From positions 258,354,001-258,418,000 of the forward strand of contig NC_083223.1 of NCBI RefSeq assembly GCF_032191835.1: a DNA stretch of 64,000 nt, written 5' to 3'. The notes under the pieces were generated by a model that saw nothing but the letters and a program-made list of their open reading frames with translations, did no database searches and had not been told where the DNA came from. Source of the DNA: Heteronotia binoei. Its lineage: Eukaryota. The position numbers and the translations under genes are program-made. Below, piece after piece: positions 2,601-47,975 of the stretch; the first letter of the stretch is position 1; each line of letters opens with the position of its first letter.

Positions 2601-2688
2601 CTTCTCCATCTTCTGCATCTCTCTCCCTTCCCCACACCACACACCCCGGCCTGGGAACTCACCTCACCTCGGTATCACCTCACACTCT

Positions 2689-10015: not shown

Positions 10016-10024
10016 CAGTTTGGC

Positions 10025-15732: not shown

Positions 15733-15996
15733 GTCGATGTATAAGTTAGCAGATTTGTGACTGCCTATATCTGCCACTGCCCCTCCACTCCGATGAGCAA
15801 TAGTTTAACACAGCCAACACCACACTGTGTTGTTAAACTATATACAAGGTTTTATTTTACATATATACAAACTCTCCATCATAATGCTCCGCCAATCAGT
15901 CATAGAATAGTAAGAGGGTAATATGTACAGCATAGCTTCATTAATATATTTTTGCTCCTAAGTACTGTACCAATTAGGAGGCAGTGCTGAGTCATT

Positions 15997-16282
15997 GGGC
16001 GTTTTCGCACTGACCTTAATCGGCAGCGACGTCCCTCTTCACCGCGCAGGATCTGCGCGGATTTCGCACCAATTGCTGCGGAGCACCCGGAAGAGCCGCA
16101 AAGTCCCGCGGCTTTTGCGGCGCAAATGGAAACCGCCAAAAACCAGTTTCCATTTGCGCCGCAAAAGCTGCGGGACTTTGCGGCTCTTCCGGGTGCTCCG
16201 CAGCAATTGGTGCGAAATCCGCGCAGATTCTGCGCGGTGAAGAGGGATGTCGCTGCCGATTAAGGTCAGTGCGAAAACGCCC
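15997..16282. mobile_element. Palindromic PIF/Harbinger-like MITE
   Basis: GGGCGTTTTCGCACT...AGTGCGAAAACGCCC ends, 3-bp TSD ATT, arms of about 137 bp nearly perfectly complementary. Confidence 0.85.
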
Positions 16283-21200: not shown

Positions 21201-24200
21201 GAGACTTACAAAAAATATAAAGAATCATCATAAACTCTCATAAACAGCACCCTTGTAATGTGGAACAATTAATACAAAAGGATCTTAATGTAAATTTTAA
21301 AAAACCAAATTAATGTAAGTCTTCATTGCACAGAGGTCCAAAGAGTCCGTTCATTCCCATAAAAATCTCTGTGGTTTCAAATGACTCCAATTGTGGAATT
21401 CCAGTACTCCACATTAATAGTACTCCATGTTCTATTAACAGCATTGCTCAGTAGCTCAACAGCAGGCAGTACTTTTTAATCCCTCATTTCACTTTTGCTT
21501 TATCCAAAAGACACTATGTTTGGAATAATCCAGATAGACTCCTTTCTGGTCAGGCTCCCATTTGACTGCTTTGGATATTGAAGAAACCATCATTGCTTCT
21601 AAAACCAGTTATTTCTTCCCCTACCCCTGAATTTCAGGTTAATGTTGTCTGAAGACACTAGAACTGAAGACTTGTTTCCTCAGCTGACCATCCTCTTACC
21701 ACCAGTAGCCATTCTTTAGTTCGCCCTTCTAAGAGCAATGCTACTGAGCAATGCTGCCAAGCTGTTAATACAATGTGGAGTACTACACAATTGGAGTAAC
21801 TTGGAACCGAAAAGATTTTTATGGGAATGAACTGACTCTTTGGACCTCTGTGCGATGAAGACTTACATTAATTTGTGTTTGATTTATTTACACTAAGGTC
21901 CTTTTGTTTGAATTGTTCCGTATGATATGGGTGTTGTTTATGAGAGCATATGATTATACTTTATATTTTTGTAAATCTCATTTGAAAGTGTGTTATTTGA
22001 TTGAGGCTGGTAATCACAGAAACCCTTGGGTTCTTCTCCAGTCACTTACTAATGTGATTCTCTGTTGTAGTTGCTTAGCCTCCAGGTGAGGCTTGGAGAT
22101 CTCCTGCTTTTACAACTGATCTCCAGCTGGCAGAGGTCAGCTCCCTGGAGAAAAAGGCTGCTTGCAAGCGTAGACTGGATGGCATTGTACCATACTGAGG
22201 CCACACCCCTCCCCAAACCCTGCCCTCTTCTGGCTTCACCCCCAAAGTCTCCAGGTATTTTCCAACACAGACCTGGCAACCCTAATAATTGCCCCCAGAG
22301 CTGGCATTGAAATGTTCTGCAGGTCCATTGGTCTCTTAGTAGTAAACTGCAGAGATGACATGCTTGACCTCCCTCTCAATGGTCCCAAAGAATGTGGTCC
22401 CTAAGGCTGTGAGGACCTCCTTCAGCATCCCTAGCCTGACAAATACGGGAACGAGGGAGTCTGCCAGAGTTTGCATCAATCCTGTACAAAGGCTGGGCTT
22501 CAGGAAAACAAGTTGCCTGACCCACCAAAACCAGAATGAAACAGTCCACCCACAGTGGACCCACAGTGTCTATGCCCACCAGGGTTGCCAATCCCCAGGT
22601 GGGGGCAGAGGATCCCCCGGTTTGGAGGCCCTCCCCCTGCTTCAGGTTCGTCAGAAAGCGGGGGGAGGGGAGGGAAATGTCTGCTGGGAACTCTGTTATT
22701 CCCTATGGTGATTTATTCCCATAGAAAATCATGGAGAATTGATCCGCTGGTATCTGGGGCTCTGGGGGGCTGTTGTTTTGGGTAAAGGCACCAAATTTTC
22801 AGTATAGCATCTAGTGCCTCTCTCCAAAATACCCCCCAGGTTTCAAAACTATTGGACCAGGGGGGCCAATTCTATAAGCCCCAAAAGAAGGTGCCCCTAT
22901 CCTTCATTATTTCCTATGAAAGGAATTGAAAAGGTGGGCCGTCCCTTTAAATGTGATGGCCAGAACTCCCTTTGGAGTTTAATTATGCTTGTCACAGCCT
23001 TGATCTTGGCTCTACCCCTAATGTCTCCTGGCTCCACCCCCAAAGTCCCCAGATATTTCTTGAATGGGACTTGGCAACCCTAATGCCCACCCATTCTCAT
23101 GGTGCTCCTATGCTAGGCAGGTTTTGTGGTGGGACTTTCACCCCGTCCTGGGGCTTCCCTACCTTCTGGCAAACCAAGCAGGAGCGGCAGAAATGCTTCG
23201 TGTATTTCCCCTTCTATGCCAGCTGGGCCTTGGTCTTGCGTATTCCTAAATGACCGCCCAGAACTGCTCTGTATGCTAAACTGAAAAGTTTCTCTCAGTG
23301 TGTTTTTGGCATGGGAAGTGGAGGCTACAGTTGCTGCTCCTCTGGCTGCTTCCTGGAAATAATGTCTGTATACAGCTGTTTATTCCTGATCACAAACTAG
23401 GCTGGATTCTGTTTGGAAACGAGGGCTTCATCCCTAGTCTCATTTAAACTAGGGAGGGGGCAGGAAGAGTTTGCTGACCGTCAAGTTCCCTTGGGATCAC
23501 CCCTCCCTGCAGTTCCTCAGCTCTGTTCAAAACACCGTCTTCCCTTCCAGGAGAGGACACCTAGGGTTGCCAGCCTCCAGGTGGGGCCTGGAGATCTCTC
23601 GCTTTTACAGCTGATTTCCAGCTGGCAGAGATCAGCTCCCCTGGAGAAAATGGCTGCTTTGGAGGGCGAACTCTATGGCATTGTACCATGCTGAGGCCCC
23701 TCTCCTCCCCAAACCCCACCATCTCCCAGCTCCCCCCTGCCCCAAAGTCTCCAGGTATTTTCCAATACAGACCTAGCAACCCTGACCACTGCCAACTCAG
23801 CTACGCAATCATGCTTGTGCTGGGATGTGTCAAGAAACTGGTCTCTTTAAGCAGTTTCTTGTTCAGTTCAAAGAATGGCTCAGGCTGAGGCCAAAAAGTT
23901 TTGTTTTTTGAAAACTTAGGTCAAGCTCCTTGTAGCTTCACAGACTCTGATAAGGGAGATGGGAGGTAACCCAGGCACTGGACACACCAGTAGGCCTGGT
24001 AGCTTCAAGGACACATGAATCTAGGAGGGTACATCCTCTCGTTCGCACCTGAGGTAATGGGTGGGAGAAGGTGTTTGTTTAATTGGACCAAATGCAACTT
24101 TGGAGCATTTGGTCTGACATTTAGTCTGATTGGCAAACTCGACTGGCCAAACTAGTTGCTGAACAACATACCCTTATCGGTATGTTTGTTGGTCTTAAAG

Positions 24201-27200
24201 GTGCTACTGGACTCCAACTTTGTTCTGTTGCTTCAGACCGACAGAACTGCCCACTTGGATCTACCTTATTGGTCACGTTATATTATTCACTATACATTTG
24301 ATTGGTTAACTAGGAACAGGGCTTTTTTGGTAGAAATAACCTAGCAGGAACTCATTTGCATATTAGGCCACACCCCTGATATCACCATTGCTTCACACAG
24401 GGCTTTTTTTATAGAAATAGCCAGCAGGAATTAATTTGCATATTAGGCCACACCCCGACATCAAGCCAGCCGGAACTGCATTCCCGTGCGTTCCTGTTCG
24501 AAAAGGAGGGGGGGAACCCTGGCTAGAATCAGTCACTAATAGGGTTGCCAGCCTCCAGGTGGACTTTGGCAAAAAACAAGAAACCACAGTGCACAAGTTG
24601 AGCTACCACAAAATTTAAACACCGTATAGTTCACATATTAGCGTGATATATAACAATCTCCAAAAAGGTAGTATGCGCTTTGAACCAATACCGAAAGTCC
24701 ATGAGTAACCTCAAGGCAATTTCAATGGTGATTTCTCAGTGCTATTTTGTAGACTGGTGACTCTCAGCACTATTTTGTCGATTGGTGAAGACACGCCTCC
24801 CACGTTTTATTGCAGCATGTTTCAAGAGGCTATCTCCCTTCTTCAAATCACCCTCATTGAATCTGGAATTGTAAAATAATCATTCATAATAATACTGATT
24901 CCAGAAACTAGTGCAAAACATCCATAAATCCCAAAGACACACAACATAGCACATACCCACTGCTCAAGAATTTCTGACGCACAAGTCCAAAAGTAATGCT
25001 GGCAGTCTAGGTTCCCAGCGAATGGAACCAAAACTGCATAATTAAATGGAGCAGAGGTCCATCAGTGGCTATTAGTGACAGCATATTGTTGGAACTCTCT
25101 GTCTGGGGCAGTGATGATGCTCTGTATTTTTGGTGCTTGTGGGGGCACAGTGGGAGGGCTTCTAGTGTCCTGGCCCCACTGATGGACCTCCTGATGGCAC
25201 TTGGGTTTTTTGGACACTGTGTAACACAGTGTTGGACTGGATGGGCCATTGGCCTGATCCAACATGGCTTCTCTTTGTGTTCTTAGCAGTGTTGAATACA
25301 AGTAGTTTATCTTTAAGATGTTTTGGAGATTGTAACATCTTGAATATTTAGGAATGTTCTATGCACCTAAGTGTGGGGAGGGGGGGTAGAGAGAGAGAGA
25401 GAACTATTGGACTCAGTTTTATGGGTGACATATGAGTTTTATTGCTGTGCTGCAAAGAATGATTAGTAGAAAGCTGCAATCATAAGACAAAAAATGTGAA
25501 CTGTCAGGGGGTGCGGGGAGAATGAGTGGTGGCAAAAATTTGATTGCAGGAGCCTCTTGTTGGGTACCAAAATAGAAATTGTCCTTTGCTTCTTGGTGTG
25601 GATGTCCCTCATATTCATGCTATCTTCTTATCAGATATGAACCAACGGTTACAGCTACGGCTGTTATTGCATCTATTCCTTTGCCTATGGTAGGTCCTGT
25701 CTGTACATCAGCAACAGCATCTGTGACCTGCAAGAAAAGACAAAGAGGTTTTCATTGGGGAGGTACACTTATTTTCAGAATGGCACCATCAATTAAAGCA
25801 ATGTGCCTCCCATACCTTCCCCCCAGCATCGTGGTACATTCATGCACTTCTGGGATTTCCTTGGCTTTTTTCTGATCTTTCTTTAACCTGATTTGCTCTG
25901 AAGTTCTGGGAAAGACTGTAGTAAAGTCTGGATGGCTGCAGAGGAGGGGGGGGGGGGGCTTCCGGTTTTCTGGCTGAAATGGCAGCCATTTGCTCAATTT
26001 GTTGATTTTACTATTCTGTCATTGAATCTTAAATTTTTTTACCATTTTGCATTCTAAATCACTCCCTACCAGGTAATTTTACTATACTGTCATTGGTTCT
26101 TAAATTTGTACCAGTTTGCATTCTGAGCCACTATGGCTTTAGTCACTGTACCGGATTCCTCGTCTGAGGGTGTGCTTAGAGAGCACACGAAAGCTTATGT
26201 TCTGAATAAAACTAAATTGGTCTTAAAGGTGCCACTTGACTATTTTGTTCAGCCATTTTCTCTAACCCTGCTTCTGCTTATTTCTTTAAAAAAACCGCAT
26301 CTAGTCTGCCGTCTGCCTAAAAGAAGTAGCCCATTTCTGCACAAGTGCAAAACTCCACATCAGCGTTCTTAAATAATCAACATTTGTAAAACTTCCAACA
26401 CAACATTTTGCCTCCACAGGAGCAGATCCAAATTTAGTGCTCCGTTAGCCTATGCTTTCCAAATCCGCTTTTCCAGCGATTTTTCCCTTTAGAACTGAAT
26501 TTGCAGTTTTCCAGTGAGTAATCTCCCATTTTGGAAAGAGCCCCTTGGTGCAGAGTGGTAAAGCTGCAGTACTGCAGTCCGAAGCTCTGCTCATGACATG
26601 AGTTTGATTCCAGCGGAAGCTGGGTTCGGGTAGCTGGCTCGAGGTTGACTCAGCCTTCCGAGGACGGTAAAATGAGTACCCAGCTTGCTGGGGGGACAGT
26701 GTAGATGACTGGGGAAGGCAATGGCAAACCACCCCGTTAAAAAGACTGCCGTGAAAATGTTGTGAAAGCAACGTCACCCCAGAGTCGGAAATGACTGGTG
26801 CTTGCACAGGGAACTGTCGATGTATAAGTTAGCAGATTTGTGACTGCCTATATCTGCCACTGCCCCTCCACTCCGATGAGCAATAGTTTAACACAGCCAA
26901 CACCACACTGTGTTGTTAAACTATATACAAGGTTTTATTTTACATATATACAAACTCTCCATCATAATGCTCCGCCAATCAGTCATAGAATAGTAAGAGG
27001 GTAATATGTACAGCATAGCTTCATTAATATATTTTTGCTCCTAAGTACTGTACCAATTAGGAGGCAGTGCTGAGTCATTGGGCGTTTTCGCACTGACCTT
27101 AATCGGCAGCGACGTCCCTCTTCACCGCGCAGGATCTGCGCGGATTTCGCACCATTTGCTGCGGAGCACCCGGAAGAGCCGCAAAGTCCCGCGGCTTTTG

Positions 27201-29330
27201 CGGCGCAAATGGAAACCGCCAAAAACCAGTTTTCATTTGCGCCGCAAAAGCTGCGGGACTTTGCGGCTCTTCCGGGTGCTCCGCAGCAATTGGTGCGAAA
27301 TCCGCGCAGATTCTGCGCGGTGAAGAGGGACGTCGCTGCCGATTAAGGTCAGTGCGAAAACGCCCATTCAGTACTCCTCACCCGATTACATCATTCTACC
27401 GGCTAGAACCAGTTTTCCTCTGACAGATCTTTCTGAGTCATCTACCTGACAGCAGCTGTCAGATCAGTAGCAGTGCCTCATGCCTTACTGGCATTATTTT
27501 CTATGCCAACAGGAACTACCTTTACCTTTTACCTTTAATCTCCCATTTCCGATTTTGCTTTTCACTGCCCTTTTGTGTCATCAGTGTGTCACACATGCAT
27601 CCCACCTCCTGCATGCCCTCAGGTTGTTCTCTGGAAAGGAAAGGTCCCCTGTGCAAGCACCAGTAGTTTCCGACTCTGGGGTGACGTTGCTTTCACGTTT
27701 TCACGGCAGACTTTTTACGGGGTGATTTGCCATTGCCTTCCCCAGTCATCTACGCTTTCCCCCCAGCAAGCTGGGTACTCATTTTACCGACCTTGGAAGG
27801 ATGGAAGGCTGAGTCAACCTCGAGCCGGCTACCTGAAAATCCAGCTTCCGCCGGGAATCGACATCAGGTTGTGAGCAGAGCTTAGGACTGCAGTACTGCA
27901 GCTTTAACACTCTGCGCCACAGGACTCATTTAACTCATTGTTCTCTGAGTGACCCCCTAATTTTTAAAAGAGTAATGTTGATTGCATTAGGATGCAGGCT
28001 TTTTTTCATTATAATACAGCAGGGGTGGGCCAAACAAAATGTAAGAGCCACATAGACTAAATGTCAGATGTTGAAGAGCTGCAAGACAAACGTCAGATGT
28101 CGGAAGGAAGAGGAGGAGGAGAGATAAGATGGTAAGGTAAGGTTAGGATAGGATGGATGGCGGTCTCGGCACCTCAGTGTTAACAGCAGCCGTGGACTTG
28201 CTCTCGATGGCCGCTCTTGAATCTGGCAGCTGGGGGATCTCTCAGCTGGGAGACCCAATTCCAAGATCCGGGAAGGGTCTTGGAAGGCAAGCAGCTCGAC
28301 AGAAGGCTCAGGAGATCGGCGGCAGTTGACTCTGAGTCACTGTTGCTGCAATGCCCCGCTGCTCTGATCGCCATTTTAAAATGGTATCAGAGGTGACTGC
28401 TGGCTTCTTTTCTCTTCTATCCCTAATGATTTTTCAATGCATTTTTTTTCCTACTGCAATTATGGAAACTGTACTTTGCACTCTCCAGTCAGTAATTTTG
28501 TTGCTTCTTGCAGGTGTCTGGCCCCAATTGCCCACTTATCTTCAGCCAGGTCCAGGGCCTTCTCGGTTGTTGCTCCAGCTCTTTTGGGCCAGCTTCCTGG
28601 CGAGGCCCCTGGTCTGCAAGATCTCACTGCATTGCACATGTAAGGGCCACTCCATTTCACCAGGCCTTTGGCTAATTTTTGTGCAACTACTATGGCCTGT
28701 ACCTTGTAATTGTTTCTTGGATTACATTTTAACCACTACACCAAACTGGCTCTCAAATTGATACAGAGAAAGCGATACAGAAATTGACAGACAAGATCCA
28801 AAAGGACTAGGGCATTACCTTATCGTAGAGATAGTGGGTATACATTCAAACACCCAGTTATTGTATTGCTTGGTTCTAATATCCCAGATGAACTGAGTTT
28901 GGCAGCTGCCTATTTTGTTCCTTAAATAAATATGCTGCAATGTGAGCCGTTTGGGAAGGTCAGTGTTCCCAGAAACAATAAAAGGAAACAAGACCGGGCT
29001 CTGTGATCAGGAAACTCTTGAATGCATGAACTCTTGAGATATCAACCCAACTTTGAGGTGGCTAGCACTGGCTCACGGTCGGTGAATTTCATGGCTGACG
29101 AGAAACTTGAACCTGTGCTCCTCCCCCTCCACCATCTGCCTCTTGAACCACGGTGATCAATTTCACTTTGACCACCAGCCACCTGGGATTCAGCTCTGCT
29201 CTTCTGGCCCTGTGCTTTATCTTCCCTAGATTGAATTTGTTTCGTGTCACATCTGTGGTTTATTTTATTTTGCAGGCTGGAAAGTAAAGACTGATATGGA
29301 AAACTGAAAGGACTAGGGGATTACCCAATT
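18231..29330 (+). repeat. Tandem segmental duplication, copy 2 (11.1 kb)
   Basis: Begins caattacatacg like 5348; ends ggattacccaatt like 18222-18235; lacks 7014-7873 and 9022-9913 of copy 1. Confidence 0.95.
27080..27365. mobile_element. Palindromic PIF/Harbinger-like MITE (duplicated copy)
   Basis: Same as 15997-16282. Confidence 0.85.
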
Positions 29331-29715: not shown

Positions 29716-30815
29716 ATTAATAGCAATCTTCACAGTGGAGGATGGTAAGCAGTGAGGTGCCACAGGGCTCAGTACTGGGTCCCATGCTCTAACTTGTGCA
29801 TTAATGATTTGGAGTTGGAAGTAAGCAGTGAAGTGGCCAAGTTTGCAGATGACACTAAATTGTTCAGGGTGGTGAGAACCAGAGAGGATTGTGAGGCACT
29901 CCAAAGGGATCTGTTGAGGCTGGGTGGGCGTCAATGTGGCAGATGAGGTTCAATGTGGCCAAGTGCAAAGCAATACACATTGGGGCCAAAAATCCCAGCT
30001 ACAAATACAAGTTGATGGAGTGTGAACTGGAAGACTGACCAAGAGAGATAACTCACTGAAAATGTCAAGACAGTGTGCGGTTGCAATAAAAAAGGCCACC
30101 TCCATGCTGGGAATTATTAGGAAGGGAATTGAAAACAAATCAGCCAGTATCATAATGCCCCTGTATAAATTGATGGTTCAGTCTCATTTGGAATACTGTG
30201 TACAATTTTGGTCACCACACCTCAAAAAGGATATTATAGCACTGGAAAAAGTCCAGAAAGGCCACTGGAATTATTAAAGGTTTGGAACACTTTCCCTATG
30301 AAGAAAGGTTAAAACACCTGGGGCTATTTAGCTTGGAGAAACATTGACTGTGAGATGACATGATAGAAGTTTACAAGATTATGCATGGGATGGAGAAAGT
30401 ACTTTTCTCCCTTTCTCACAATACAAGAACTCGTGGGCATTCAATGAAATTGCTGAGCAGTCGGGTTAGAACAGATAAAAGTACGTACTTCTTCACCCAA
30501 AGGGTGATTAACATGTGGAATTCACTGCCACAGGAGGTGGTAGCGGCTACAAGCATAGACAGCTTCAAGAAGGGATTGGATAAAAATATGGAGCAGAGGT
30601 CCATCAGTGGCTATTAGCCACCGTATATTATTGGAAATGTCTGGGGCAGTGATGCTCTGTATTCTTGGTGCTTGGCAGGGGGGCAAAGTGGAAGGGCTTC
30701 TAGCCTCACTTGTGAACCTTCTGATGGCACTTGGGGTTTTTTTTTTTTGGCCACTGTGTGACAGTGTTGGACTGGATGGACCATTGGCCTGATCCAACAT
30801 GGCTTCTCTTTATGT
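29716..30815 (+). mobile_element. CR1 LINE RT C-terminus plus 3' UTR, frameshifted
   Basis: VAKFADDTKLFR RT motif, HLEYCVQFWSPHLKKDI, and a 3' UTR ending ccaacatggcttctct. Confidence 0.9.
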
Positions 30816-33189
30816 ACCGTATACCTCCTCCAAAGGGACTAGCAGCGTTTCCTTCTTTGGTCTTTCTCAGGGACATACTAGAAACAGACCCATCTGGAAC
30901 TTTGACTCTCCAAGCAATTATTTTTATTGCTGGGCCAGGCTACCATGAAGTTAATATATGTCTTATGGCTTCTATTTACACTTGCAGGTGAATCTAAAAC
31001 CCAGAGACCTGACTGAGATTGACTGGGCTGTTTACCAGCATTGGGCTATCTACCAGGTAATGGATGTGATATGTGAGGGGTGATATGATCAGCATCTTCA
31101 AGTACTTGAAAGGCTGTCATATAGAGGATGGTGTTGTTTTCTGCAGTAGCAGAAAGTCTCACCAGAACCAATGGGTTGAAATTAAATCAAGAGGCTTTGC
31201 CTAAACATTAGGAAGAACTTCCTGACAGAGCAATTCCTCAGTGGAACAGGCTTCCTCTGCAATTTGCCACCTGACAGCGATGAGGATTCTGTAAACTTAT
31301 GGAGAGGTATCTGTGAATTTCCAGCCTTGTGCAGGAGTTTGGACTAGATAATTCTGGGTCCCCTCCAACTCTATAATTCTATGCCACCCCACTGGTAGCT
31401 GGAATGACCACTCAGCCAGTGGTTCAGGGACAAGCTACGGAACACAAATCCATATTTTCCTTAAAAATGTACACAATTAACAGTTGTATAAATATTATAT
31501 TTTTTTAATAAATACATACATTCAGTCACACCAACCCAGAAGCCCCTTGCCAGCACCATGACTTAAAAGCACACACAAAAAAGCCCCCCAAAAATGTTTA
31601 GGGCCAACTGTGCATGTTTTACTTACATGTGAGCTCCTGGAGAGAATTATGCTATGGAATGGCAACCCCCCCCCCCCCAAAAAAAAACCAAGTAGATGGG
31701 CTCAGCATGTAAACTGTATTTAGCATAGGGAAGGCAGGACAAAGAAAGGGAGGGGGCATGGAGCAGAGTGGAAGAGGTCTGGAAACTAGCAAGAGCTCAC
31801 CACCGTAACAATTAGCTTCCCGCACTAAAAATCCTTCCACAAAGCTTTACCTGCATCCGTTGGTATTATTACCATTTTCTTTTTTTTTAAACCGTGTTTA
31901 AAGAGGAAGAAAAACAAGAGACAAAACAGCCAAATACTAAATGGCCCCATATTGCTCAAAGAGGTTAACAGTGGGTTGGTCTCCATGCAGGTTTCATGTG
32001 AAGCCCAACACGGAAGTGTCTTCAGAGTAGATTCAAATGGGTGGCAAAGCTCTGCATGGGAAGGAGCCAATCTTGTCTATCTGCTTGGCCATCTCAACAT
32101 CATACAGCAGCTTTTCAGTGCAGGATTCCAGTTTGAAGTGCAATGTGCTAAAATTCACAAAAAGTACTGCTGCAGGCAATCTGACCTCTTAATTGTTACA
32201 AATAAGCAATGAAACCAGGTAAGAGAGCTGAGATGGGATTGGGACTCAGGGAATGTAAAAGGCCTTTACAGAAATTTAAGAAAACGGGTGATCTGAAGAT
32301 GGATCCGCAGGGCCTCTAGCTCAGGAGTGTCATTTCTTATGAGGGCCAAATCTGACTAAGATTAGGTAGCAGAGATATAAACAAACATTCTTATAACATT
32401 AGCACTTGGTCTTAAAGGTGCTTTCTTTGCATTTCTCCCATGGGATACAGGAAACTGGACAAAAAGCTCTGATTCTTTCCTTCCTTCCCCAGGGAGGAAG
32501 GAAAGAGCCTGAGCCAAGAGGAAGAGAGACTTGGCTCAATAGCTCTGCTGACCGAGAGAGCCTGGCAAAGCCTTCCCTCCTTCCTCCCCAAGGGAGGAGC
32601 CTCAGCCAATAGAGAAAACAGAGGTTTTGCTCTGTAGCTCCTGTGCAATTGAGCAAGCCTGGCAAAGCAACCTGTGATGTAGAAGGAAGCGAGAGAGGGA
32701 GAAGGAAGCAGATGACAGACAGTTACTCGGGGGCCTGATGGGGGCCCCGATTTGGCCCCCAGACCACATGTTTGCCACCCCTGCCCTAGCTGATCCCAAG
32801 GACAACATGAGTTTCAAATATCCTGGGCTGGGCTGGGACCCATTCTGGGCTAATTGGCAGTGGTAAACCTGCATTGGTATTCAGCCAGATTCTTTCTCCT
32901 CCACTTTTCCTTTCCCAAAACAACTCAGCCCAAGTCTTTAAGGCAATCCTGGGTTTCATTCCTGAATTCTTTAACGGCCTTTTCAGCTTGTTTAGGGTGC
33001 TGCATTCTTTGTTGCTTGAGAAGTCTAAATGTTTACAGAATCCGGGGGAAGAACTGGGTCAGACCAAAACCTGTGGGGAAACGAAATCGATAAGATGCAC
33101 CATATCTGTACACACCTTCTCCCAAAATCAACTGTTCTTTTGTACACATCAAGCCCTTTAACAGCTTGCAAACAGAGCCCTATCACACC

Positions 33190-33314
33190 TCCTGTCCCCA
33201 CAACCTCATCCTATGCAGAATGACTGGGCCATGAAGCCCTTTTGTCCCAGTGCTTGAGGATAGAACCAGCAGATGGAAATGCCACTGGCACCGAAGACAG
33301 AACACTGGGGGACA
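33190..33314 (-). ncRNA. SNORA57: Intronic box H/ACA snoRNA, probably SNORA57 (U99)
   Basis: Minus strand: hairpin 1 (CCCAGTG/CACTGGG), H box ACAAAA (33240-33245), hairpin 2 (TCATTCT/AGGATGA), then ACA plus 3 nt (33193-33195). The 5' pocket UGUCUUCG + CCUC pairs with 18S GGAGG-UU-CGAAGACG, with 14 nt to the H box. Lies in a GT-AG intron (33071-33323). The name is inferred from synteny: human SNORA57 lies head-to-head with C11orf98. Confidence 0.72.
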
Positions 33315-34479
33315 TTTCTTTACCTCCGGACATAACAGAGCCGGGCACTGAGCCACCCGGGCCTGCCAAGAAAAGGAGGCCTCTTCTCACTGGCATTACA
33401 AAATAATCTTTTCTAGGTCTAGGTACTAAAAAACCCTTAAGCAGATTACAGCTGCTCTCAGAAGACACACAGAGCAGAAACACAGGCCAGCAGACCAGGC
33501 TAAAAGACCTTGTGGTTGCAGGCAAGATCTAATACAGAAAACACACAAAGGGGAGTACCACAGAAAGCAAGGCTCAGGGAGGGAGTTCAAGAAGTTCCCA
33601 GTTCAGCCCTGACCTGGATAGCTCAGGCAAGCCCAATCTCGTCAGATCTTAGAAGTCAAACAGGGTTGACTCTGGTCAATACTTTGATGGGAGACCTCCT
33701 TGGAATACCAGAAGTTGGGAGGCAGGGTCAAGCTTTAGTCAGCCATCTTCCTGAATATCCTCCATGCTCCCACTAGGGGTCAGTCACTAGAGGTCATCAA
33801 CAAAATAAAAAAAAAAGTCCCCAGCATTCTTGTCTAAGTACGACAAGGCTGGGAAGGCTTTTCTCTGCCAGAAGCAAAGAAAAGCTGCTGGGGCTCAGAC
33901 AAGTAGATCAAACTGAGCCAATGGGCTGAATCAGTAGAGCAACAATATGGAAACAGGTTTTCCCTCTTCAACTCTAGCTTCTGGAACAGGGCTGCCAACC
34001 ACCAGGTGGGGCCTGGACTTACCCCAGAATTAAAACTGATGACAGAGATTTGTCCTCCTGGAGAAAACGGCAGCTTCACTGGGTGAACTCTACGGCCTCA
34101 CTTCCCTGCTGAGCATCCTTTCTTCTCAAAACTCCACCCTCCCCAGGCATTTCCCAACCCGGATCCTTTTGGTGCTTTGGTGACCAAGAAAACCCACTAT
34201 AACATCCACTTTGCAAATCCTCAGAATACTCCGTTTCTAACAGCCTTTCTTTAACTAGTAAACTTAATTCCTAGCAAATGCCTTCTTTGCCGCCTAGATG
34301 GCCTTCCTTTCAATACCTCTTTCCATTCCATGACCTTCTGTAGTGTTTTTGCTGTCAAGTCCCAGGTGACTTCAGGTGACCCCGTAGGGTTTTCAAGATA
34401 AGAGACCTCCAGAGGTTGTTTGTCATTGCCTGCCTCTGCATAGCTACTCTGGTATTCCTTGGAGATCTTTCATCCTAAT

Positions 34480-35306
34480 TGTGGCAGACTGGTCCTGCGT
34501 CTGCTAGCTGGACCTGATCCTGCCCAGCCCTTCCCGGTATACCAACCTGAAAGGGCCATTCCCCTTTGCTGCCTCAAGGTATTCGCTGCCACCACTGTCC
34601 CTATCTGGCCTCTGGTTAGGTGGGACAGCCTCTTAACCTCCCTCTGGACTCGTTAAGAACCCTTCTTGGAGCTTCCTAGGGAATCTCTGGGGCTCCCCTG
34701 GAGAGTTGGCAACCAGCCGATGTGCCACTTCTCTCCACCCTAGGGATTCCCCAACCCACTCCCAGCGTTCCAAGCAGTTGGGGGGAACTAGATGGTACAG
34801 AGGGGCTCTACTTTAAACAAACATAACATTTATTTACAACATACAACTATTTACAGGCATTTTTTAAAAAGTGCACAGAAGCAACAAATTATAGCAGGGG
34901 AAAAACGCTCCTTCTCTCCCTCTTATACTACTTGCCCTCACTAGCTGACCTACAGGGCAGGCACCTTACTTGGACTGTTGCAAGCCTGACCATACCTTCT
35001 CAACTAACTGATGTCAAAGACTGAACTCAAACTGACTGTCAGCTTCCTCTGACAACTTTTAACTGTCTACCCGCCCAAAATCTTCAATATAAATTGCAGT
35101 TCCCGTCCAGGAACTGGTTTACCCTCCTGCAGCCTTCTGGGAGACCAGCCTCAAAGACTTCCTGTCTGTCTAGGAGGCCTCCTCAGAACTGCTGTTTCCA
35201 GACAGAGGGAGGGGAAAGACTAGGCCCCGAAGCCTGCTTCCAGAGTTTAATAGACTTCTCCAGCCAGCTCCCAGTAAAAGACCAGCCAAAATGGCATTTC
35301 CCTACA
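34480..35306 (-). mobile_element. Probable solo LTR inserted into a 5S-derived SINE
   Basis: TG...CA termini; imperfect 6-bp TSD (cctaat / ccaaaa); the flanks rejoin to give a continuous SINE; minus-strand TATA-like motif near 34922 and AATAAA near 34833. Confidence 0.6.
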
Positions 35307-36109
35307 CCAAAACTAGCCAGGGCCAATCCTACTCAGCTTCTGAAATCTGACGAGATCAGGCCAGCCTGGAGCTATCCAGATCAGCGTTAAGTACTCCTAA
35401 GTCAAGTAGGGTTGCCAGCCTCCAGGTGCGCCCTGGAGATCTCCCATTTTGCAACTGATCTCCAGCTTGCAGAGATCAGCTCCCCCGGAGAAAATGGCTG
35501 CTTTGAAGGGTGGACTCTATGGCATTGTACTATGTTGAGGCACCACCCTCTCCTGGATCCATCCCCAAAGTCACCAGGTTATTTTCCAAAACAGATCTGG
35601 CAACCTTAAGGTAAATTCTTAAGATTTACAGAGCAATCATAAAAAGAGGTACTCCAATCTAAACTGGATTTCAATGGGCTTGGATTGCATCGTTAGCCCC
35701 GTGGTTAAGGCGCACGGGGTCGGGTTTGTGAATCCCTCCGGACAGAGCTGGTCGGGGCAAGCGCCTACACAGACAAGATACCCCAGAGTTTCCACCAAAG
35801 TCGCTGCCTTTATCCGTGTGTATATTCAGGGGCAGGGCGGCCTGCAAATTTAAATTATAAATAGCAAAAATAAAAAAGCGGAAAGGCACGCACACGCCTT
35901 TCTCAGGGCCACGATGCCTCCACGTGGCCGAACCCCTTCCTTCCAAGGACGCAGGCTGCATTCAGGCTACAAGAAGCTGCGCCCCACAAAAGCCATTCCA
36001 GAACCCCTCCGCTTTGCTCCCTTCCCTCCAGGCTACCAGCGAGCACTCAAGAACCACTTCGACCCATGACTCACCTTCCGCGCACACTTAAAAAATGGGA
36101 AAGAAAGAG

Positions 36110-36360
36110 CAACGGCCGCGACCTCGCAATTTATATCTCTGCCGGCGCCTCTCCGGCGCCACCAGGTGGCCATTTCAGAAAATAAGGGGGAAGCGAGAGC
36201 GGGAGAACCGCTCAAATCCCACTCTGGTTGGTCCTGAGCCTTTTGGCCAATCGGAAGAGGGCAGGAAAGAACGCTCATTGGGTAGGAAGTCACATGATGC
36301 CGCTGCTCTCCGGAAATCCTGGAGCGGCGTCATTGGGACTTGGCGTGGCGTGGGAGCAGC
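36110..36360. promoter_or_regulatory. Bidirectional CpG promoter shared by the snoRNA host (-) and C11orf98 (+)
   Basis: CpG-rich; TATA on the minus strand, CTCF-like CCACCAGGTGGC (36159-36170) overlapping YY1-like GCCATTT, CCAAT boxes on both strands, ETS-like GGAAG motifs. Confidence 0.75.
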
Positions 36361-36399
36361 ATGGGGGCTCCTGGAGGGAAAATCAACCGGCCGAAGACG
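36361..36399 (+). CDS. C11orf98: C11orf98 coding exon 1 ([13 protein letters not shown])
   Basis: ATG at 36361 in good context (agcagcATGG); donor ACG|GTACTG. Confidence 0.93.
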
Positions 36400-39300
36400 G
36401 TACTGGAGTGTTCTTTTTGTGGAGTGGGGGAAGGTTTAGTATTTCTTGCACGGCTTTTAGAATGATAACAGTGCTTCTCCTACTATCGTTTAGTAGCTCT
36501 TACACTAACCCTGTAAGGTAGGCCAGTGTTACAGCTACATAGTTACGTGAGAAGCCATGTTGGAGCAGGCCAATGTCCCACCCAGTCAAACACTCTGTCA
36601 TGCAGTGGCCAAAAAAAATGTCATCAGGAGGTCCACCAGTGGGGCCAGAACACTAGAAGCCCTCCCACTGTCCCCCCCCCCCCCCACAATCACGAAGAAT
36701 ACAGAGCATCACTGCCCCTGACAGAGAGTTCTAACAATACACTGTGGCTAATAGCCACTGATGGCCCTCTGCTCCAGATGTTTATCCAGTTCCCTCTTGA
36801 AACTTGCTATGCTTGTAGCCACCACCACCTCCTGTGGCACTGAATTCCATGTATTAATCACTCTTTGGGTGAAGAAGTACTTCCTTTTATCCGTTCTAAC
36901 CCAATAGCTCAGCAATTTCATTTAATGCCCATGAGTTCTTGTATTGTGAGGAAGGGAGAAAAGTACTTCTCTCTACCTTCTTTATCCTATGCATAATCTT
37001 GTAAATCTATCATGTCACCCCTCAGTCAACATTTCTCCAAGCTAAAGAGCCCCAAGTGCTTTAACCATTCTTCATAGGGAAAGTGTTCCAACCCTTTAAT
37101 CATTCTAGTTGCCCTTTTCTGCTAAAGAGTTATGGAGATAAAGAGGTTTATCATGATAAACTTTCTGAGCAAGCTCGCTTTTGAAGGACATTCAGTGAGG
37201 CAGAGAAAAGATGGGAAGAGGTACTACAGGACTGTTTCTTGAAGTCTGCTGGACTGAGTTTAGGTGTGTATGCCTTGGAGTGCTGGAACCCTTTGAGATT
37301 TTCGTTTGAAGAGCTGCCAATAGCGTAGTTCATTTAGACTCTTACTGAAACTCTTTGGGCAGCAAATTCTGGACAGAATGAAAAAAAAAGGTCCTTCGTG
37401 TGACTTTGTGGTACTTACTGCCAGAAGATGTGGTGAAGGTGGCAAATTTAGAACAGAAATCTAAACTTGTTTCAGCAATTGAGGGGGGAGCTGTGGCTCA
37501 GTGGCAGAGCATCTGCTTTTCAGGTCAAAGATCCCATGATCAGTCCCCTTCATCTCCCATTAAAAGGATCAGGTAGCGGGTTGATTAGAAAGACCTCTTA
37601 TCTAAGATCCTGGAGAGCCACTGCCAGCTTGAGTAGACAGTAGAAGAAGAAGATGATGATATTGGATTTATATCCCGCCCTCCACTCCGAAGAGTCTCAG
37701 AGCGGCTCACAATCTCCTTTATCTTCCTCCCCCACAACAGACACCCTGTGAGGTGGGTGGGGCTGGAGAGGGCTCTCACAGCAGCTGCCCTTTCAAGGAC
37801 AACCTCTGCCAGAGCTATGGCTGACCCAAGGCCATGCTAGCAGGTGCAAGTGGAGGAGTGGGGAATCAAACCTGGTTCTCCCAGATAAGAGTCCTCACAC
37901 TTAACCACTACATCAAACTGGCTCAGTACTGATCTTGATGGACCCAGGGTCTGATTCAGAATGAGGCCGCTTCATGTGTTGCAGTTATTAACCATGGAGG
38001 CTAAATGCCTTCTTATGCCCCCAGTGAATTTGTGTCAGAGGTAAGATTTGAACTGGGGGCCCTGCCTTACATTTTCACAATCGCTGTATGAAAATTTCTA
38101 AATCCAGATTTAGGCCCTCTCTTTGCAAGCAGCAGCCCTTGCTTTTGAGCGCATTCCACCCATTAGGATTTGACTTGCTGGTTCAGAGGGTTTGTGTCTG
38201 ATGTTCACATAATCTGTCTGTCGGACTTAGGAGCTGCAGAAGAAACTTTTCAAAAGACGCCGCGTTTTGAGCAAGCAGAAGAGAAAGAAACACCGGATTG
38301 TGGGCGCCGTGGTGGATGAGGGGCTCATCACCGTCCACCACTTGAAGAAACGCTGGTGAGTTGTGCTTAGCCTGGGATCCTGGCTCTGTGGAAGTTCTCT
38401 GCTGGAAAGCTTGGGAAGGACTAGGGATCAAGTTGCAAGGGCAGGGTGACTGCAGCTTGGATTTTATCCTGAGCCCCTGGGGATAGCTCTGCTGGTGTGT
38501 GAAGCAGGATGAGACCTTGGATATTCATTGCCTCCTCTCACTGAAGAGTTTCCTTGCACGATGTCTTCCTGGCCTCTCTTCTAGCTCCAGCTCTCGATCT
38601 AACATCACTCTTTCGGGGAAGAAGAGGAGGAAACTGCTGAAGCAGCTCCGCCATACTGCGAAGGAGATGGTTGCCATGCAAGGTAAGCCTCACTCCCTTG
38701 GGAGGAGCCTGGGAAGAGGACCCCAGTCCCTTGGGCACAGGGATTTGGCTGGTCCCAGGGAGGGGAAACTCTGTCCTAGAAGTCCTCATTGAGTGCTAAG
38801 GATGGTGAGACCTGGAGGGAACAGTCCTTTCTAGGGGTTTTTTTTTTAGCAGGAACGCACAGGAACACTGGCCTGGCACCAGGGGGTGTGGCCTAATATG
38901 CAAATGAGTTCCTGCTGGGTGAAACAATGGTGATGTCAGAGGGGGGCCTAACATGCAAATGAGTTCCTACTGGGCTTTTTCTACAAAAAAAGCCCTGGTC
39001 CTTTCTCTTTTTTTGAGAGCCAGTTTGGTGTAGTGGTAAAATGCGTGGACTCTTATTTGGGAGAACGGGGTTTGATCCCCCACTCCTCCACTTGCAGCTG
39101 CTGTAATGGCTTTGGGTCAGCCATAGCTCTCGTAGGAGCAGTCCTTGAAAGGGCAGCTTCTGGGAGAGCTCTCTCAGTCTTACCCACCTCACAGGGTGTC
39201 TGCTGTGGGGGAAGAAGGTAAAGGAGATTGTGAGCTGCTCTGAGACTCTGAGATTCAGAGTATAGGGTGGGATATAAATCCAATATCATCTTCTACCCAG

Positions 39301-41574
39301 TACATAGTTCCAGCCCCAGTTTCTGCAACTTCAGCTGTGGTAGAATCATTTATTTATTTATTTTAATTTATATCCGCCCTACCCCGCCGAATCATAAAAT
39401 CACAGAGTTGGAAGGGGCCATACCGGTTATCTAGTCCAACTCTCTGCTGCACAGAATCAGCCTAAAGCATCCCTGACAAGCATTGCTTGAGCCGCAGGGG
39501 ACACTTCTTACCTTTCTGTCCTGTTATTTAAACCCATTATTGCGAGTTCTATCCTCTGCCGCCAAAAGAACAGAGAACATAAGAGAAGCCATGTTGGATC
39601 AGGCCAATGGCCCATCCAGTCCAACATTCTGTTTCACATGGTGGTCCAAAAACCACAGGTGCCATCAGGAGGTCCACCAGTGGGGCCAGGACGCTAAAAG
39701 GAATAGCTTCCTGCTCTCCTCAAAGTGACAGCCTCTCAAATACTGAAAGAGGCTGAACATGCAAAGCTTCACCATAGTTCTTCTGTATATTTTGGATTGC
39801 AGTCAGATTAGTCGTGAATGCTTGAAGTTGCCTTACCCACTGGGCCAGCCAGCCCTTTAATGACTGCTCTGCCTGGTGCTGGCTCTTTGGCGACTGGGGC
39901 AGAGAAAAGCTATTTGCTGTGATTGATCCCTGAGATACTTCTGGCTGGAGGCACCAAGGATTCCACCTGGGCCTTTCTCAGTACGGCAGATGCTCTTAGG
40001 AAGGTGAACTGATGTGATGATGAACTAGTCCTTATCCAAGTGCATTTTGCAACATTCGTTTATCGTTACCTTGTGTGCTATACATGGGCTTGTAAAGATC
40101 TACATTTAGCAGAGAGAGCCGGATAGAAAGAGAGGTCAGGAATTATGAAGATAGGGGAAATGGATAAGGCTGTTAGTTTGTACTGAAAGGGGAACTAAAC
40201 TGGGGATGGGACAATTAGAGGGAAGCTCCCAGTTCCCTTGTGATGGAGAGGGGACATAAGAGAAGCCAAGTTGGATCAGGCCAGTGGCCCATCCAGTCCA
40301 ATACTCGTGTCACACAGTGGCCAAAAAACCAGGCGCCATCAAGAGGTCCATCAGTGGGGCCAGGACACCAGAAGCCTTCCCACTGTTGCCCCCTCCAAGC
40401 ACCAAGAATACAGAGCATCACTGCCCCAGACAGAGAGTTTCAACAATAAGCTGTGGCTAATAGCCACTGATACACCTCTGCTCCATGTGTTTATCCAATC
40501 CCCTCTTGGAAGCTGGCTATGCTTGTAGCTGCCGCCACCTTCTTTGGCAGTGAATTCCATGTGTTAATCACCCTTTGGAAGCCAGTTTGGGTTGAGAGCC
40601 AGTTTGGTGTAGTGGTTAAGCGTGAAAACTCTTATCTAGGAGAAGGGTTTGATTCCCCACTCCTCCACTTGCACCTGCTGGAATGGCCTTGGGTCAGCCA
40701 TAGCTTTCACAGGAGTTGTCCTTGAAAGGGCAGTTTCTGGGAGAGCTCTCTCAGCCCCACCCGCCTCACAGGGTGTCCATTGTGCGGGGGAAGGTAGAGG
40801 AGATTGTGAGCTGCTCTGAGACTCTGAGATTCAAAGTATAGGGTAGGATATAAATCCAATATATTCTTTTTTAATCTGTTCTTATATCAGAACCAGTTTG
40901 ATGGATCACCAAAGCTCAAAGGTCGCCATCTGGGTCTGCTAGGGAAAACTTCCTAAGCTGCGAGGGCACATTGTCTTTTATTAAGAGCCGTGAAACATCT
41001 TTAAGTAGTGAGCAGATTTCTGAGTTTCTCAGAGCCTCGTGGAACTCAGACGCTTTAGGCATTTTAGCGGAATGGCACTTCCGCTGTTTGGGAAATGCAG
41101 AGGAGGGCTGGGCCTAGCTTGAAGGGTGAGTTGGGTTTGAGGCACAGAGGGGGACCTGCCTGTTCCTAATTCCTTCTCTACATCCTCGTTGCAGTTGATG
41201 TGTCTCCTGGTCCAAGTAAAAAACCCCGGCGCAGGAAGGGGAAAAGAGAAAGAATGCAAGAAAAGTTTGCAGCCAGCCTGGATATAGAGATGGTAGAAGT
41301 GGCGCCAATCGCAGAGAGCGTGGAGCCGGTTGTGGAAAGCGTGGAGCCGGTCGCGGAGAGCATGGAGCCGGTCGCGGAGAGCGTGGAGCCGGTCGCGGAG
41401 AGCGTGGAGCCGGTCGCGGAGAGCGTGGAGCCGGTCGCGGAGAGCGTGGAGCCGGTCGCGGAGAGCGTGGAGCCGGTTGCGGAGAGCGTGGAGCCGGTTG
41501 CGGAGAGCGTGAAGCCGGTTGCGGAGAGCTTGGAGCTAGTCACAGAAAGTGTGGAGCCAGTCACAGAGAGCTGA
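36361..41574 (+). CDS. C11orf98: C11orf98 orthologue, 4 coding exons: 36361-36399, 38231-38355, 38585-38682, 41195-41574; 213 aa
   Basis: Spliced translation [13 protein letters not shown]|[42 protein letters not shown]|[32 protein letters not shown]|[10 protein letters not shown]...DIEMVEV matches recalled human C11orf98 ([26 protein letters not shown]...[13 protein letters not shown]...DVEM). All introns are GT-AG, phases 0/2/1 are compatible, total 642 nt ending in TGA. AATAAA at 42260-42265. Confidence 0.95.
36545..37122 (-). mobile_element. CR1 LINE 3' fragment in C11orf98 intron 1 (other 3' UTR pieces near 13915-14160, 25041-25286, 39570-39700, 40250-40575, 43660-43870, 52615-53580, 54025-54144)
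   Basis: Reverse complement of the 29716-30815 family's 3' end. Confidence 0.85.
38231..38355 (+). CDS. C11orf98: C11orf98 coding exon 2
   Basis: Acceptor cttag|GAG, donor TG|GTGAGT; encodes [13 protein letters not shown]...HHLKKR. Confidence 0.95.
38585..38682 (+). CDS. C11orf98: C11orf98 coding exon 3
   Basis: Acceptor ctcttctag|C, donor CAAG|GTAAGC; encodes [22 protein letters not shown]. Confidence 0.95.
39015..39293 (+). mobile_element. Squam3-like SINE in C11orf98 intron 3
   Basis: Full-length family match. Confidence 0.8.
41195..41574 (+). CDS. C11orf98: C11orf98 terminal coding exon with repeat-expanded tail
   Basis: Acceptor ctcgttgcag|TT, frame-compatible with exon 3; the DIEM motif precedes the repeats. 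Confidence 0.85.
41311..41571 (+). repeat. Coding minisatellite, 21-bp unit (gcggagagcgtggagccggtc), 12 full units plus a partial; encodes (AESVEPV)n
   Basis: Directly visible tandem array, in frame with C11orf98. Confidence 0.97.
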
Positions 41575-46421: not shown

Positions 46422-46608
46422 ATCGCTTCTCGGCCTTTTGGCTAAGATCAAGTGTAGTATCTGTTCTTATCAGTTTAATATCTGATACGTCCTCTATCTG
46501 AGGACTATATATTAAATGGATTTTTGGGACTGGGAGATGGAATAGGGGCTTGCTCCGTCCACTCCACGCATCGACCTGGTATTGCAGTACCTCCAGGAAC
46601 GGTGCACC
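46422..46608 (+). ncRNA. RNU2: U2 spliceosomal snRNA gene, copy 1
   Basis: Full length ATCGCTTCTCGGCC...GGTGCACC; branch-point recognition GTAGTA and Sm site ATTTTTG intact. Differences from recalled human U2 (C78U, A85U, 107-110 AGCA>GACU, A126G) fall in a loop, in linkers, or keep a G-U pair. DSE, PSE and 3' box are present. Confidence 0.98.
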
Positions 46609-46631
46609 TCCCCCCGGGGAGAATATTGATG

Positions 46632-47765: not shown

Positions 47766-47788
47766 CATCGATATTCTCCCCGGGGGGA

Positions 47789-47975
47789 GGTGCACCGTTC
47801 CTGGAGGTACTGCAATACCAGGTCGATGCGTGGAGTGGACGGAGCAAGCCCCTATTCCATCTCCCAGTCCCAAAAATCCATTTAATATATAGTCCTCAGA
47901 TAGAGGACGTATCAGATATTAAACTGATAAGAACAGATACTACACTTGATCTTAGCCAAAAGGCCGAGAAGCGAT
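47789..47975 (-). ncRNA. RNU2: U2 spliceosomal snRNA gene, copy 2 (identical to copy 1)
   Basis: Exact reverse complement of 46422-46608, with its own DSE, PSE and 3' box. Confidence 0.98.

What the first reader, a model, noticed from the sequence alone, without database searches (positions are those of the whole stretch)
30905..36109. Apparently non-coding 5'TOP snoRNA host gene at the CSKMT (METTL12) position, head-to-head with C11orf98
Seen: TATA box, C-initiated 13-nt pyrimidine start (36109), a 35-nt first exon with a consensus donor, several further GT-AG exons with no long ORF, a terminal AATAAA, and an H/ACA snoRNA in one intron. Known: 5'TOP starts and short ORF-less exons typify snoRNA host genes (GAS5, SNHG1); in human the gene opposite C11orf98 is CSKMT, which hosts SNORA57; as I recall, mouse has a non-coding RNA there instead. 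Inference: this squamate keeps only a ribosome-biogenesis host transcript here, with the methyltransferase ORF lost or relocated. No CSKMT-like ORF appears in the ORF track across the 36 kb downstream.
Basis: partly seen in the sequence, partly recalled or inferred. Interest (0 to 1): 0.75.

Follow-up and report, generated by a model that had tools for sequence, protein, structure and literature searches.

The report
SNORA57 host gene split from CSKMT
This gecko stretch is the old start of the CSKMT gene (promoter, short first exon, and an intron carrying the ribosome-modifying snoRNA SNORA57), but the enzyme-coding exons lie elsewhere, so it probably acts only as a snoRNA carrier, a known kind of gene.

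Summary
On the minus strand there is a TATAAA, a 13-nt C-initiated pyrimidine tract, a 35-nt exon 1 with a GTGAGT donor, and a 3-kb intron holding SNORA57 (Rfam 122 bits). A conserved acceptor lies 169 nt after the snoRNA. All of this sits about 250 bp head-to-head with C11orf98. Two other geckos share these elements, and alligator has TATA, pyrimidine start and donor in front of an intact CSKMT.

The later exons and the AATAAA end could not be verified. The only RNA data were unspliced contigs from related species.

No CSKMT-like coding sequence exists in the window (eleven CSKMT proteins, tblastn). CSKMT is nevertheless not lost in squamates. It is annotated intact in five geckos, several lizards and several snakes.

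- In turtle and alligator it follows SNORA57 directly.
- In Podarcis it lies 9.3 kb downstream, beyond two U2 genes.
- In Paroedura it lies 57.5 kb downstream, beyond another gene.
- In a snake, POLR2G converges 5.4 kb after the snoRNA.

Most likely this is the squamate orthologue of the mammalian U99 host gene, physically uncoupled from CSKMT and non-coding. Long-range splicing to CSKMT is not excluded. It is a new member of a known kind, of modest interest.

The parts
36130..36135 (-). TATA box (TATAAA) of the host-gene promoter
   Evidence: Read. Invariant in window, Eublepharis and Paroedura. Also present in alligator 28 nt before its pyrimidine start.
36136..36360 (.). Shared bidirectional promoter between the host gene and C11orf98, with CCAAT/ATTGG boxes (about 36247-36282) and a conserved GGTGGCGCC...GAGAGGCGCC block
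   Evidence: Alignment A1 shows these blocks conserved in three geckos. ATTGG is also seen in snake, turtle and alligator.
36075..36109 (-). Exon 1 (35 nt, no ATG), beginning with the 13-nt tract CTCTTTCTTTCCC (36109-36097), a candidate 5'TOP start
   Evidence: The start site is inferred from TATA spacing (26-30 nt in four species) and was not measured.
33071..36074 (-). Intron 1 (3004 nt), donor GTGAGT at 36074-36069, acceptor ...TTTCCCCACAG ending at 33071; holds repeats and a 5S-like element
   Evidence: The donor GGTGAG is invariant in three geckos. The acceptor is conserved in three geckos, with a matching pyrimidine tract plus CAG in turtle.
33240..33379 (-). SNORA57 (U99) H/ACA snoRNA, 169 nt upstream of the acceptor
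   Evidence: Rfam RF00191, 122.3 bits, full length. 94-95% identical to two other geckos, against 68-73% for the flanks. Found in the same position in snake, lacertid, turtle and alligator.
32871..33070 (-). Start of exon 2; its 3' end is unknown. The first ATG (33005-33003) opens only a 26-codon frame.
   Evidence: The first 45 nt are conserved (76-83%), then identity falls to 48-66%. Indels of 11, 5 and 18 nt separate the geckos. Frame read.
31509..31514 (-). ATTAAA, candidate polyadenylation signal
   Evidence: Not verified by RNA.
30923..30928 (-).
   Evidence: Present, but not verified by RNA or by conservation.
36361..41574 (+). C11orf98 orthologue (DUF5564), four coding exons, last exon with a 21-bp repeat acidic tail

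Best explanation
This is the squamate orthologue of the amniote U99/SNORA57 host unit, which is the ancestral 5' end of CSKMT. A TATA-containing Pol II promoter, shared back-to-back with C11orf98, probably starts transcription on a C within a pyrimidine tract (a 5'TOP-type start). A 35-nt exon 1 is spliced to an exon beginning at 33070. SNORA57 is released from the excised 3-kb intron, presumably by debranching and exonucleolytic trimming, and assembled into an H/ACA RNP. That RNP guides pseudouridines at 18S-1004 and 18S-1045/1046. In squamates the CSKMT coding exons, including the ATG/mitochondrial-targeting exon, have been moved away from this module. What remains here most likely works as an ORF-less host transcript whose only product is the snoRNA, as in mouse. 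Shown: the sequence elements, their conservation, the snoRNA, the absence of CSKMT coding sequence in the window, and the separate position of CSKMT in other squamates. Inferred: the start site, the splicing, the non-coding status and any TOP-type regulation.
For: Elements read, with SNORA57 at 122 bits. TATA, pyrimidine start, about 35-nt exon 1 and GGTGAG donor are conserved in three geckos, and the acceptor 166-169 nt after the snoRNA likewise. Alligator has TATAAA, then CTTTTTCT, then GTGAGT, then SNORA57, then a 258-codon CSKMT ORF. Turtle has C11orf98, SNORA57, CSKMT and LBHD1 in the human-like order. There is no CSKMT homology in the window, L001, L002 or L003 using eleven CSKMT proteins, while the same queries hit L005 at E 1e-76 to 1e-162. 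No SAM-binding motif I is found in six frames. 24 minus-strand ORFs of 30525-35961 give no Pfam match better than E 0.06. The snoRNA is 94-95% identical between geckos, against 48-66% for exon 2 beyond its first 45 nt, with indels not divisible by three. Paroedura CSKMT is a compact two-coding-exon gene 57.5 kb downstream, with an LRAT-family gene in between. In a snake, POLR2G converges 5.4 kb after SNORA57, with a U2 gene between them. Literature: the U99 host gene in human and mouse has exons less conserved than the snoRNA (PMC1687206); CS-KMT is absent in mouse and rat (PMC9006661); SNORA57 targets are given in PMC6984369.
Against: There is no direct RNA evidence. The three RNA runs found are metatranscriptome contigs of related species. 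They cover intron and exon alike, show no GT-AG joint, and have nothing at 36080-36279. CSKMT lies on the same strand downstream in Paroedura and Podarcis, so read-through and long-range splicing from this promoter remain possible. The gene ranges returned by the look-up of encoding contigs are CDS ranges, so annotated 5'UTR exons of squamate CSKMT could not be seen. The position of CSKMT in the window's own genome is unknown.
Confidence: 0.65

Rival explanations
1. This is still the CSKMT gene. Exons 1 and 2 would be 5'UTR exons spliced across a very long intron (more than 33 kb here, about 57 kb in Paroedura, 9 kb in Podarcis) to the ATG and methyltransferase exons lying beyond the window's start.
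For: CSKMT is on the same strand downstream of SNORA57 in Paroedura and Podarcis. The ancestral gene in alligator and turtle uses this promoter region. Two NCBI accessions for Heteronotia CSKMT share one protein sequence, which could mean transcripts differing in their UTRs.
Against: In Paroedura a same-strand LRAT-family gene lies between the two units, and a GC-rich segment directly precedes the CSKMT ATG. In Podarcis two U2 snRNA genes lie between them. In the snake the downstream neighbour is a convergent POLR2G, so linkage is broken there. Exon 2 decays faster than the introns. No coding gene is called in the 10 kb next to C11orf98 in two geckos.
Confidence: 0.2
2. SNORA57 is made from an independent or unspliced transcript, and the TATA/pyrimidine/donor arrangement is not used as an exon. 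Mouse Snora57 has been called monocistronic.
For: PMC5454292 lists mouse Snora57 among 'non-genic' snoRNAs with their own Pol II and H3K4me3 peak and cites a report that it is monocistronic. RNA contigs run unspliced across the acceptor, for example 32929-33368.
Against: The snoRNA lies 2.7 kb from the only promoter-like element here. The donor and acceptor are conserved at fixed spacing in geckos while the intron length varies from 1.1 to 3 kb. No TATA or snRNA-type promoter is conserved directly upstream of the snoRNA.
Confidence: 0.08
3. The promoter and exon 1 features are a chance arrangement. Only the snoRNA is real, carried in an intron of some other, unrecognised transcript.
For: No RNA support for the start or the junctions.
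Against: The composite pattern occurs once in 128 kb of searched strand. It is conserved element by element in three geckos and in alligator.
Confidence: 0.03

Closest known systems
Human U99HG = CSKMT (METTL12), host of SNORA57/U99 (Weber 2006, PMC1687206)
   Same: Same snoRNA, in the first intron of a gene head-to-head with C11orf98. The exons are less conserved than the snoRNA. The same neighbourhood genes (LBHD1, INTS5, UQCC3) are seen in turtle.
   Different: The human gene continues into the methyltransferase ORF within a few kb. Here no CSKMT coding sequence follows within 33 kb.
Mouse Snora57 host transcript (AK011444 / 5730408K05Rik)
   Same: A host unit for SNORA57 at the C11orf98-orthologue locus without a CSKMT protein. 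PMC1687206 describes the transcript, and PMC9006661 states that CS-KMT is absent in mouse and rat.
   Different: In mouse the enzyme is reported absent altogether. In squamates it is retained as a separate gene. The mouse snoRNA has also been described as monocistronic (PMC5454292).
Classical non-coding 5'TOP snoRNA host genes (GAS5, SNHG1/UHG, U17HG); from general knowledge, not tested here
   Same: TATA or pyrimidine-tract start, short poorly conserved exons without a long ORF, and the snoRNA as the conserved intronic product.
   Different: Those genes host several snoRNAs and are not known to be remnants of a still-existing coding gene. This unit hosts one snoRNA and derives from the 5' end of CSKMT.
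Alligator and turtle CSKMT
   Same: Orthologous promoter region, SNORA57 intron and position opposite C11orf98.
   Different: There the ATG/targeting exon and methyltransferase exon follow 0.3-1.7 kb after the snoRNA. The ATG-exon donor ...CAG|GTGGGTGC is conserved and in squamates travels with the coding body.

Membership tests
SNORA57 (Rfam RF00191) H/ACA snoRNA | Full-length match to the covariance model above the gathering score | tested here: met
   122.3 bits against 40, model positions 1-149. Orthologues score 112-131 bits in six other reptiles.
Non-coding 5'TOP snoRNA host gene | snoRNA lies in an intron, on the same strand, between usable splice sites | tested here: met
   GTGAGT donor and pyrimidine-tract/CAG acceptor flank it and are conserved in three geckos. 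Use of the sites in RNA was not shown.
Non-coding 5'TOP snoRNA host gene | Transcription starts at a C followed by an uninterrupted pyrimidine tract | tested here: inconclusive
   A 13-nt tract lies 26 nt after TATAAA, with equivalent tracts in Eublepharis, Paroedura and alligator. No CAGE or 5' read data exist, and the RNA contigs leave 36080-36279 uncovered.
Non-coding 5'TOP snoRNA host gene | Spliced, polyadenylated transcript | tested here: inconclusive
   Only unspliced contigs from related species were found, with no GT-AG joints. Two candidate poly(A) signals are present.
Non-coding 5'TOP snoRNA host gene | No conserved protein-coding frame in the exons | tested here: met
   No Pfam hit in 24 ORFs. 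No CSKMT homology. Frameshifting indels in exon 2 between geckos. The first ATG of exon 2 opens 26 codons. This holds within the window only. The joined exon model was not searched.
Non-coding 5'TOP snoRNA host gene | Exons less conserved than the snoRNA | tested here: met
   94-95% for the snoRNA against 48-66% for exon 2 beyond its first 45 nt.
Non-coding 5'TOP snoRNA host gene | Growth- or mTOR-dependent translational control, NMD sensitivity | not testable with these tools
   Needs polysome profiling and NMD inhibition.
CSKMT (METTL12) gene | Encodes a seven-beta-strand methyltransferase with motif I and the DKGTxD / SDEDPD motifs | tested here: not met
   Nothing in 64 kb by tblastn with eleven orthologues or by motif scan. 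The same queries recover L005 and L004.
CSKMT (METTL12) gene | Position: head-to-head with C11orf98, SNORA57 in the 5' intron | tested here: met

The most novel reading that the evidence does not exclude
A dual-function gene came apart in squamates. Local rearrangement around U2 snRNA gene arrays separated the TATA/TOP promoter and its snoRNA intron from the CSKMT coding body early in squamate evolution. Each half survived on its own: the 5' half as a non-coding snoRNA host, and the 3' half as a compact CSKMT gene with a new promoter. This would be independent of the mouse and rat case, where the coding half is reported absent.
Probability: 0.5. Interest if true: 0.45.

Novelty: new member of a known kind. 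Interest (0 to 1): 0.35.

Why it matters
Many snoRNA host genes are non-coding, and how they arise is usually inferred after the fact. Here the same orthologous unit can be compared in several states:

- coupled to an intact enzyme gene (human, turtle, alligator);
- stripped of the enzyme (mouse and rat, from the literature);
- physically separated from a still-intact enzyme gene (geckos, a lacertid, a snake).

If RNA data confirm it, the promoter, first exon and snoRNA intron would be shown to be maintained by selection for the snoRNA alone. CSKMT could then function with a different 5' end. The practical value is for annotation: pipelines should call a lncRNA host here rather than stretch CSKMT models over tens of kb. 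It does not change what is known about snoRNA biogenesis or about CSKMT function.

Tried and rejected
- **RNA evidence.** One run search and one read-laying run gave only low, continuous, unspliced contigs from related species. High-depth bins were repeats. This neither supports nor refutes splicing.
- **Motif I scan.** A SAM-methyltransferase motif I regex in six frames found nothing.
- **Alternative Eublepharis exon.** I looked for the alternative first coding exon of Eublepharis CSKMT isoform X2 in the 10 kb beside C11orf98. It is not there.
- **Logan contigs.** Two contigs carrying squamate-like CSKMT (L006, L007) were fetched in the hope of seeing 5'UTR exons. Both are unspliced, showing an intron followed by the acceptor, so they are uninformative.
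- **Weak snake hit.** The tblastn hit in snake L003 at 9704-9850 (E 0.023) lies upstream of the snoRNA in GC-rich sequence and was rejected as chance.
- **Paroedura comparison.** tblastx between the Paroedura CSKMT-upstream region and window 1-31000 found only LINE/SINE-type repeats, so the window could not be placed relative to CSKMT.
- **Downstream ORFs.** Pfam on ten long ORFs of window 1-18000 found nothing.
- **Other snoRNAs.** The Rfam E-value scan found no second snoRNA in the host unit.
- **Paper not held.** The Malecki 2017 paper (PMC5663892) is not in the library.
- **Joined exon model.** Exons were examined separately.
Full report
**What is in the sequence**

Read on the minus strand, the stretch has the following elements:

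- TATAAA at 36135-36130.
- The 13-nt tract CTCTTTCTTTCCC at 36109-36097.
- An ATG-less 35-nt exon ending at 36075.
- A GTGAGT donor at 36074-36069.

Rfam places a full-length SNORA57 (U99) at 33379-33240 on the same strand, at 122.3 bits against a gathering score of 40. At E up to 1, no other snoRNA is found between 30000 and 42000.

On the plus strand the C11orf98 orthologue (Pfam DUF5564) starts with ATG at 36361. Its exons are 36361-36399, 38231-38356, 38584-38682 and 41194-41574. The two genes are therefore head-to-head, about 250 bp apart.

The composite pattern of TATA, spacing, C plus at least 9 pyrimidines, and a GTRAG donor occurs once on both strands of the window, at this place.

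**Conservation**

Using C11orf98 proteins found, I fetched the orthologous loci of five species:

- Eublepharis macularius (L001) and Paroedura picta (L002), both geckos.
- The snake Ahaetulla prasina (L003).
- Alligator mississippiensis (L004).

Using CSKMT proteins, I also fetched Paroedura CSKMT (L005), Trachemys (L008) and Podarcis (L009). SNORA57 lies opposite C11orf98 in L001-L004 and L008. L009 also holds it, but C11orf98 is not called within that locus.

In the three geckos, several elements align column by column although the surroundings are only about 70% identical. These are the CCAAT/ATTGG boxes, a GGTGGCGCC...GAGAGGCGCC block, TATAAA, a pyrimidine tract 26-30 nt later, an exon of about 35-40 nt and a GGTGAG donor. 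Alligator has TATAAA, then CTTTTTCT, then GTGAGT just before its SNORA57.

Downstream of the snoRNA, an acceptor (pyrimidine tract plus CAG) is conserved in the three geckos at 166-169 nt from the snoRNA's 3' end. This puts the first base of exon 2 at window 33070. Turtle has a matching tract.

Identity between the window and the other two geckos is as follows:

| Region | Identity |
|---|---|
| SNORA57 | 94-95% |
| Intron flanks | 68-73% |
| First 45 nt of exon 2 | 76-83% |
| Rest of exon 2 | 48-66% |

Exon 2 also shows indels of 11, 5 and 18 nt between the geckos. This is the pattern Weber (PMC1687206) described for the U99 host gene and other non-coding hosts.

**RNA evidence**

The only runs holding the stretch were three metatranscriptomes from one study, kept as contigs and 90-99% identical to the window, so they come from related animals. 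Laid on 30480-36450, they cover introns and exons alike at low depth. They show no GT-AG joint and leave 36080-36279 uncovered. This says nothing either way about the start or the splicing.

AATAAA at 30928-30923 exists, but so does ATTAAA at 31514-31509.

**Coding potential**

- No SAM-binding motif I occurs in six frames of the window.
- tblastn with the alligator CSKMT ORF, ten further CSKMT proteins and the Heteronotia protein finds nothing in the window, L001, L002 or L003.
- The same queries hit Paroedura L005 at E 1e-76 to 1e-162.
- 24 stop-free minus-strand frames of 55 codons or more between 30525 and 35961 give no Pfam match better than E 0.06.
- The first ATG of exon 2 (33005-33003) opens a 26-codon frame that is not conserved in Paroedura.

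**Where CSKMT is**

The search with the alligator ORF shows that CSKMT is annotated intact across squamates:

- Geckos: Eublepharis, Paroedura, Gekko japonicus and Sphaerodactylus. Heteronotia binoei, Gekko kuhli and Euleptes sit in the same 90% cluster.
- Lizards: Podarcis, Pogona, Elgaria, Varanus, Rhineura and Hemicordylus.
- Snakes: Thamnophis, Crotalus and Liasis.

The enzyme is therefore not lost. Its position relative to SNORA57 differs by lineage:

| Species | Arrangement |
|---|---|
| Alligator | 258-codon ORF begins about 640 nt after SNORA57 |
| Turtle | INTS5, C11orf98(-), SNORA57(+), CSKMT ATG 1.65 kb further on (+), LBHD1(-), UQCC3; the human-like order |
| Podarcis | CSKMT ATG 9.3 kb after SNORA57, two same-strand U2 snRNA genes between |
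| Paroedura | 57.5 kb after SNORA57 on the same strand, preceded by an LRAT-family gene, followed by LBHD1 |
| Snake (Ahaetulla) | A U2 gene, then a convergent POLR2G, within 5.4 kb after SNORA57; no CSKMT |

The ATG/targeting exon, recognisable by its conserved ...CAG|GTGGGTGC donor, stays with the coding body in squamates. A GC-rich segment directly precedes it in Paroedura.

In the window, 33 kb downstream of the snoRNA holds repeats and an 11.1-kb tandem duplication but no recognisable gene.

**Interpretation**

The promoter, exon 1 and the SNORA57 intron are the ancestral 5' end of CSKMT, which is the U99 host gene of mammals (PMC1687206). In squamates this module and the coding body have been pulled apart. 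The gap varies between lineages and is filled with U2 genes or other genes.

The most likely reading (0.65) is that the module now works as an independent, ORF-less host transcript whose product is SNORA57. SNORA57 guides 18S pseudouridines 1004 and 1045/1046 (PMC6984369, PMC8763049). This parallels mouse and rat, where CS-KMT is reported absent (PMC9006661) but a U99 host transcript persists (PMC1687206).

The main rival (0.2) is that these exons are still 5'UTR exons of CSKMT, spliced over a very long intron. I could not see annotated UTRs, because the gene ranges returned were CDS ranges.

I did not verify that. If it is true, this species has an intact 245-residue CSKMT elsewhere.

**Comparison with what is known, and novelty**

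Intron-encoded H/ACA snoRNAs, TATA/TOP-type host promoters and non-coding hosts are textbook. The U99 host gene itself was described in 2006.

The new part is the squamate state, with host module and enzyme gene both retained but uncoupled. I found no paper on it: the two held papers that mention both CSKMT and SNORA57 are pig GWAS studies.

The 5'TOP start is not special to the non-coding state, since alligator CSKMT shares it. I rate this a new member of a known kind, interest 0.35.

Noticed in passing
window 5348-18235 and 18231-29330: An 11.1-kb tandem duplication, 96-98.7% identical, fills most of the region downstream of the host unit. A GC-rich segment (about 9021-9913, 63% GC) is present only in the first copy. 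No Pfam domain was found in its long ORFs.
   Followed up: partly
window 33605-33723 (+), inside intron 1: A 5S rRNA-like element at 37.1 bits, just under the Rfam gathering score of 38. RNA contig depth over it was elevated, so it is probably a 5S-derived SINE.
   Followed up: no
window 46422-46612 (+), 47785-47975 (-); L001 348-538 and 25521-25711; L002 17387-20746; L003 4168-4358; L009 5921-6111 and 8697-8887: U2 snRNA genes accompany the C11orf98/SNORA57/CSKMT neighbourhood in every squamate sampled, but at different positions and orientations. In Podarcis they lie between SNORA57 and CSKMT. They may mark the rearrangement breakpoints. None was found in the turtle or alligator loci.
   Followed up: partly
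window 41300-41560 (+): The last exon of C11orf98 carries a 21-bp tandem repeat encoding an acidic (ESVEPVA)n tail. The other geckos' proteins are 128-129 residues and end shortly after the conserved part.
   Followed up: partly
L004 3344-3479 (+): An intron of alligator C11orf98 hosts SNORA2/SNORA34 (96 bits). No such snoRNA is found in the window's C11orf98 or in the gecko and snake loci at the gathering threshold.
   Followed up: no
window 54416-55690 (-): An intact single-exon 424-codon ORF that looks like PIGM.
   Followed up: no
P0038 and P0150 (Eublepharis isoform X2, Gekko japonicus isoform X1): Annotated CSKMT isoforms in two geckos replace the mitochondrial targeting exon with unrelated first coding exons. 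The Eublepharis one is not within 10 kb of C11orf98. These may be alternative promoters acquired after the uncoupling.
   Followed up: partly
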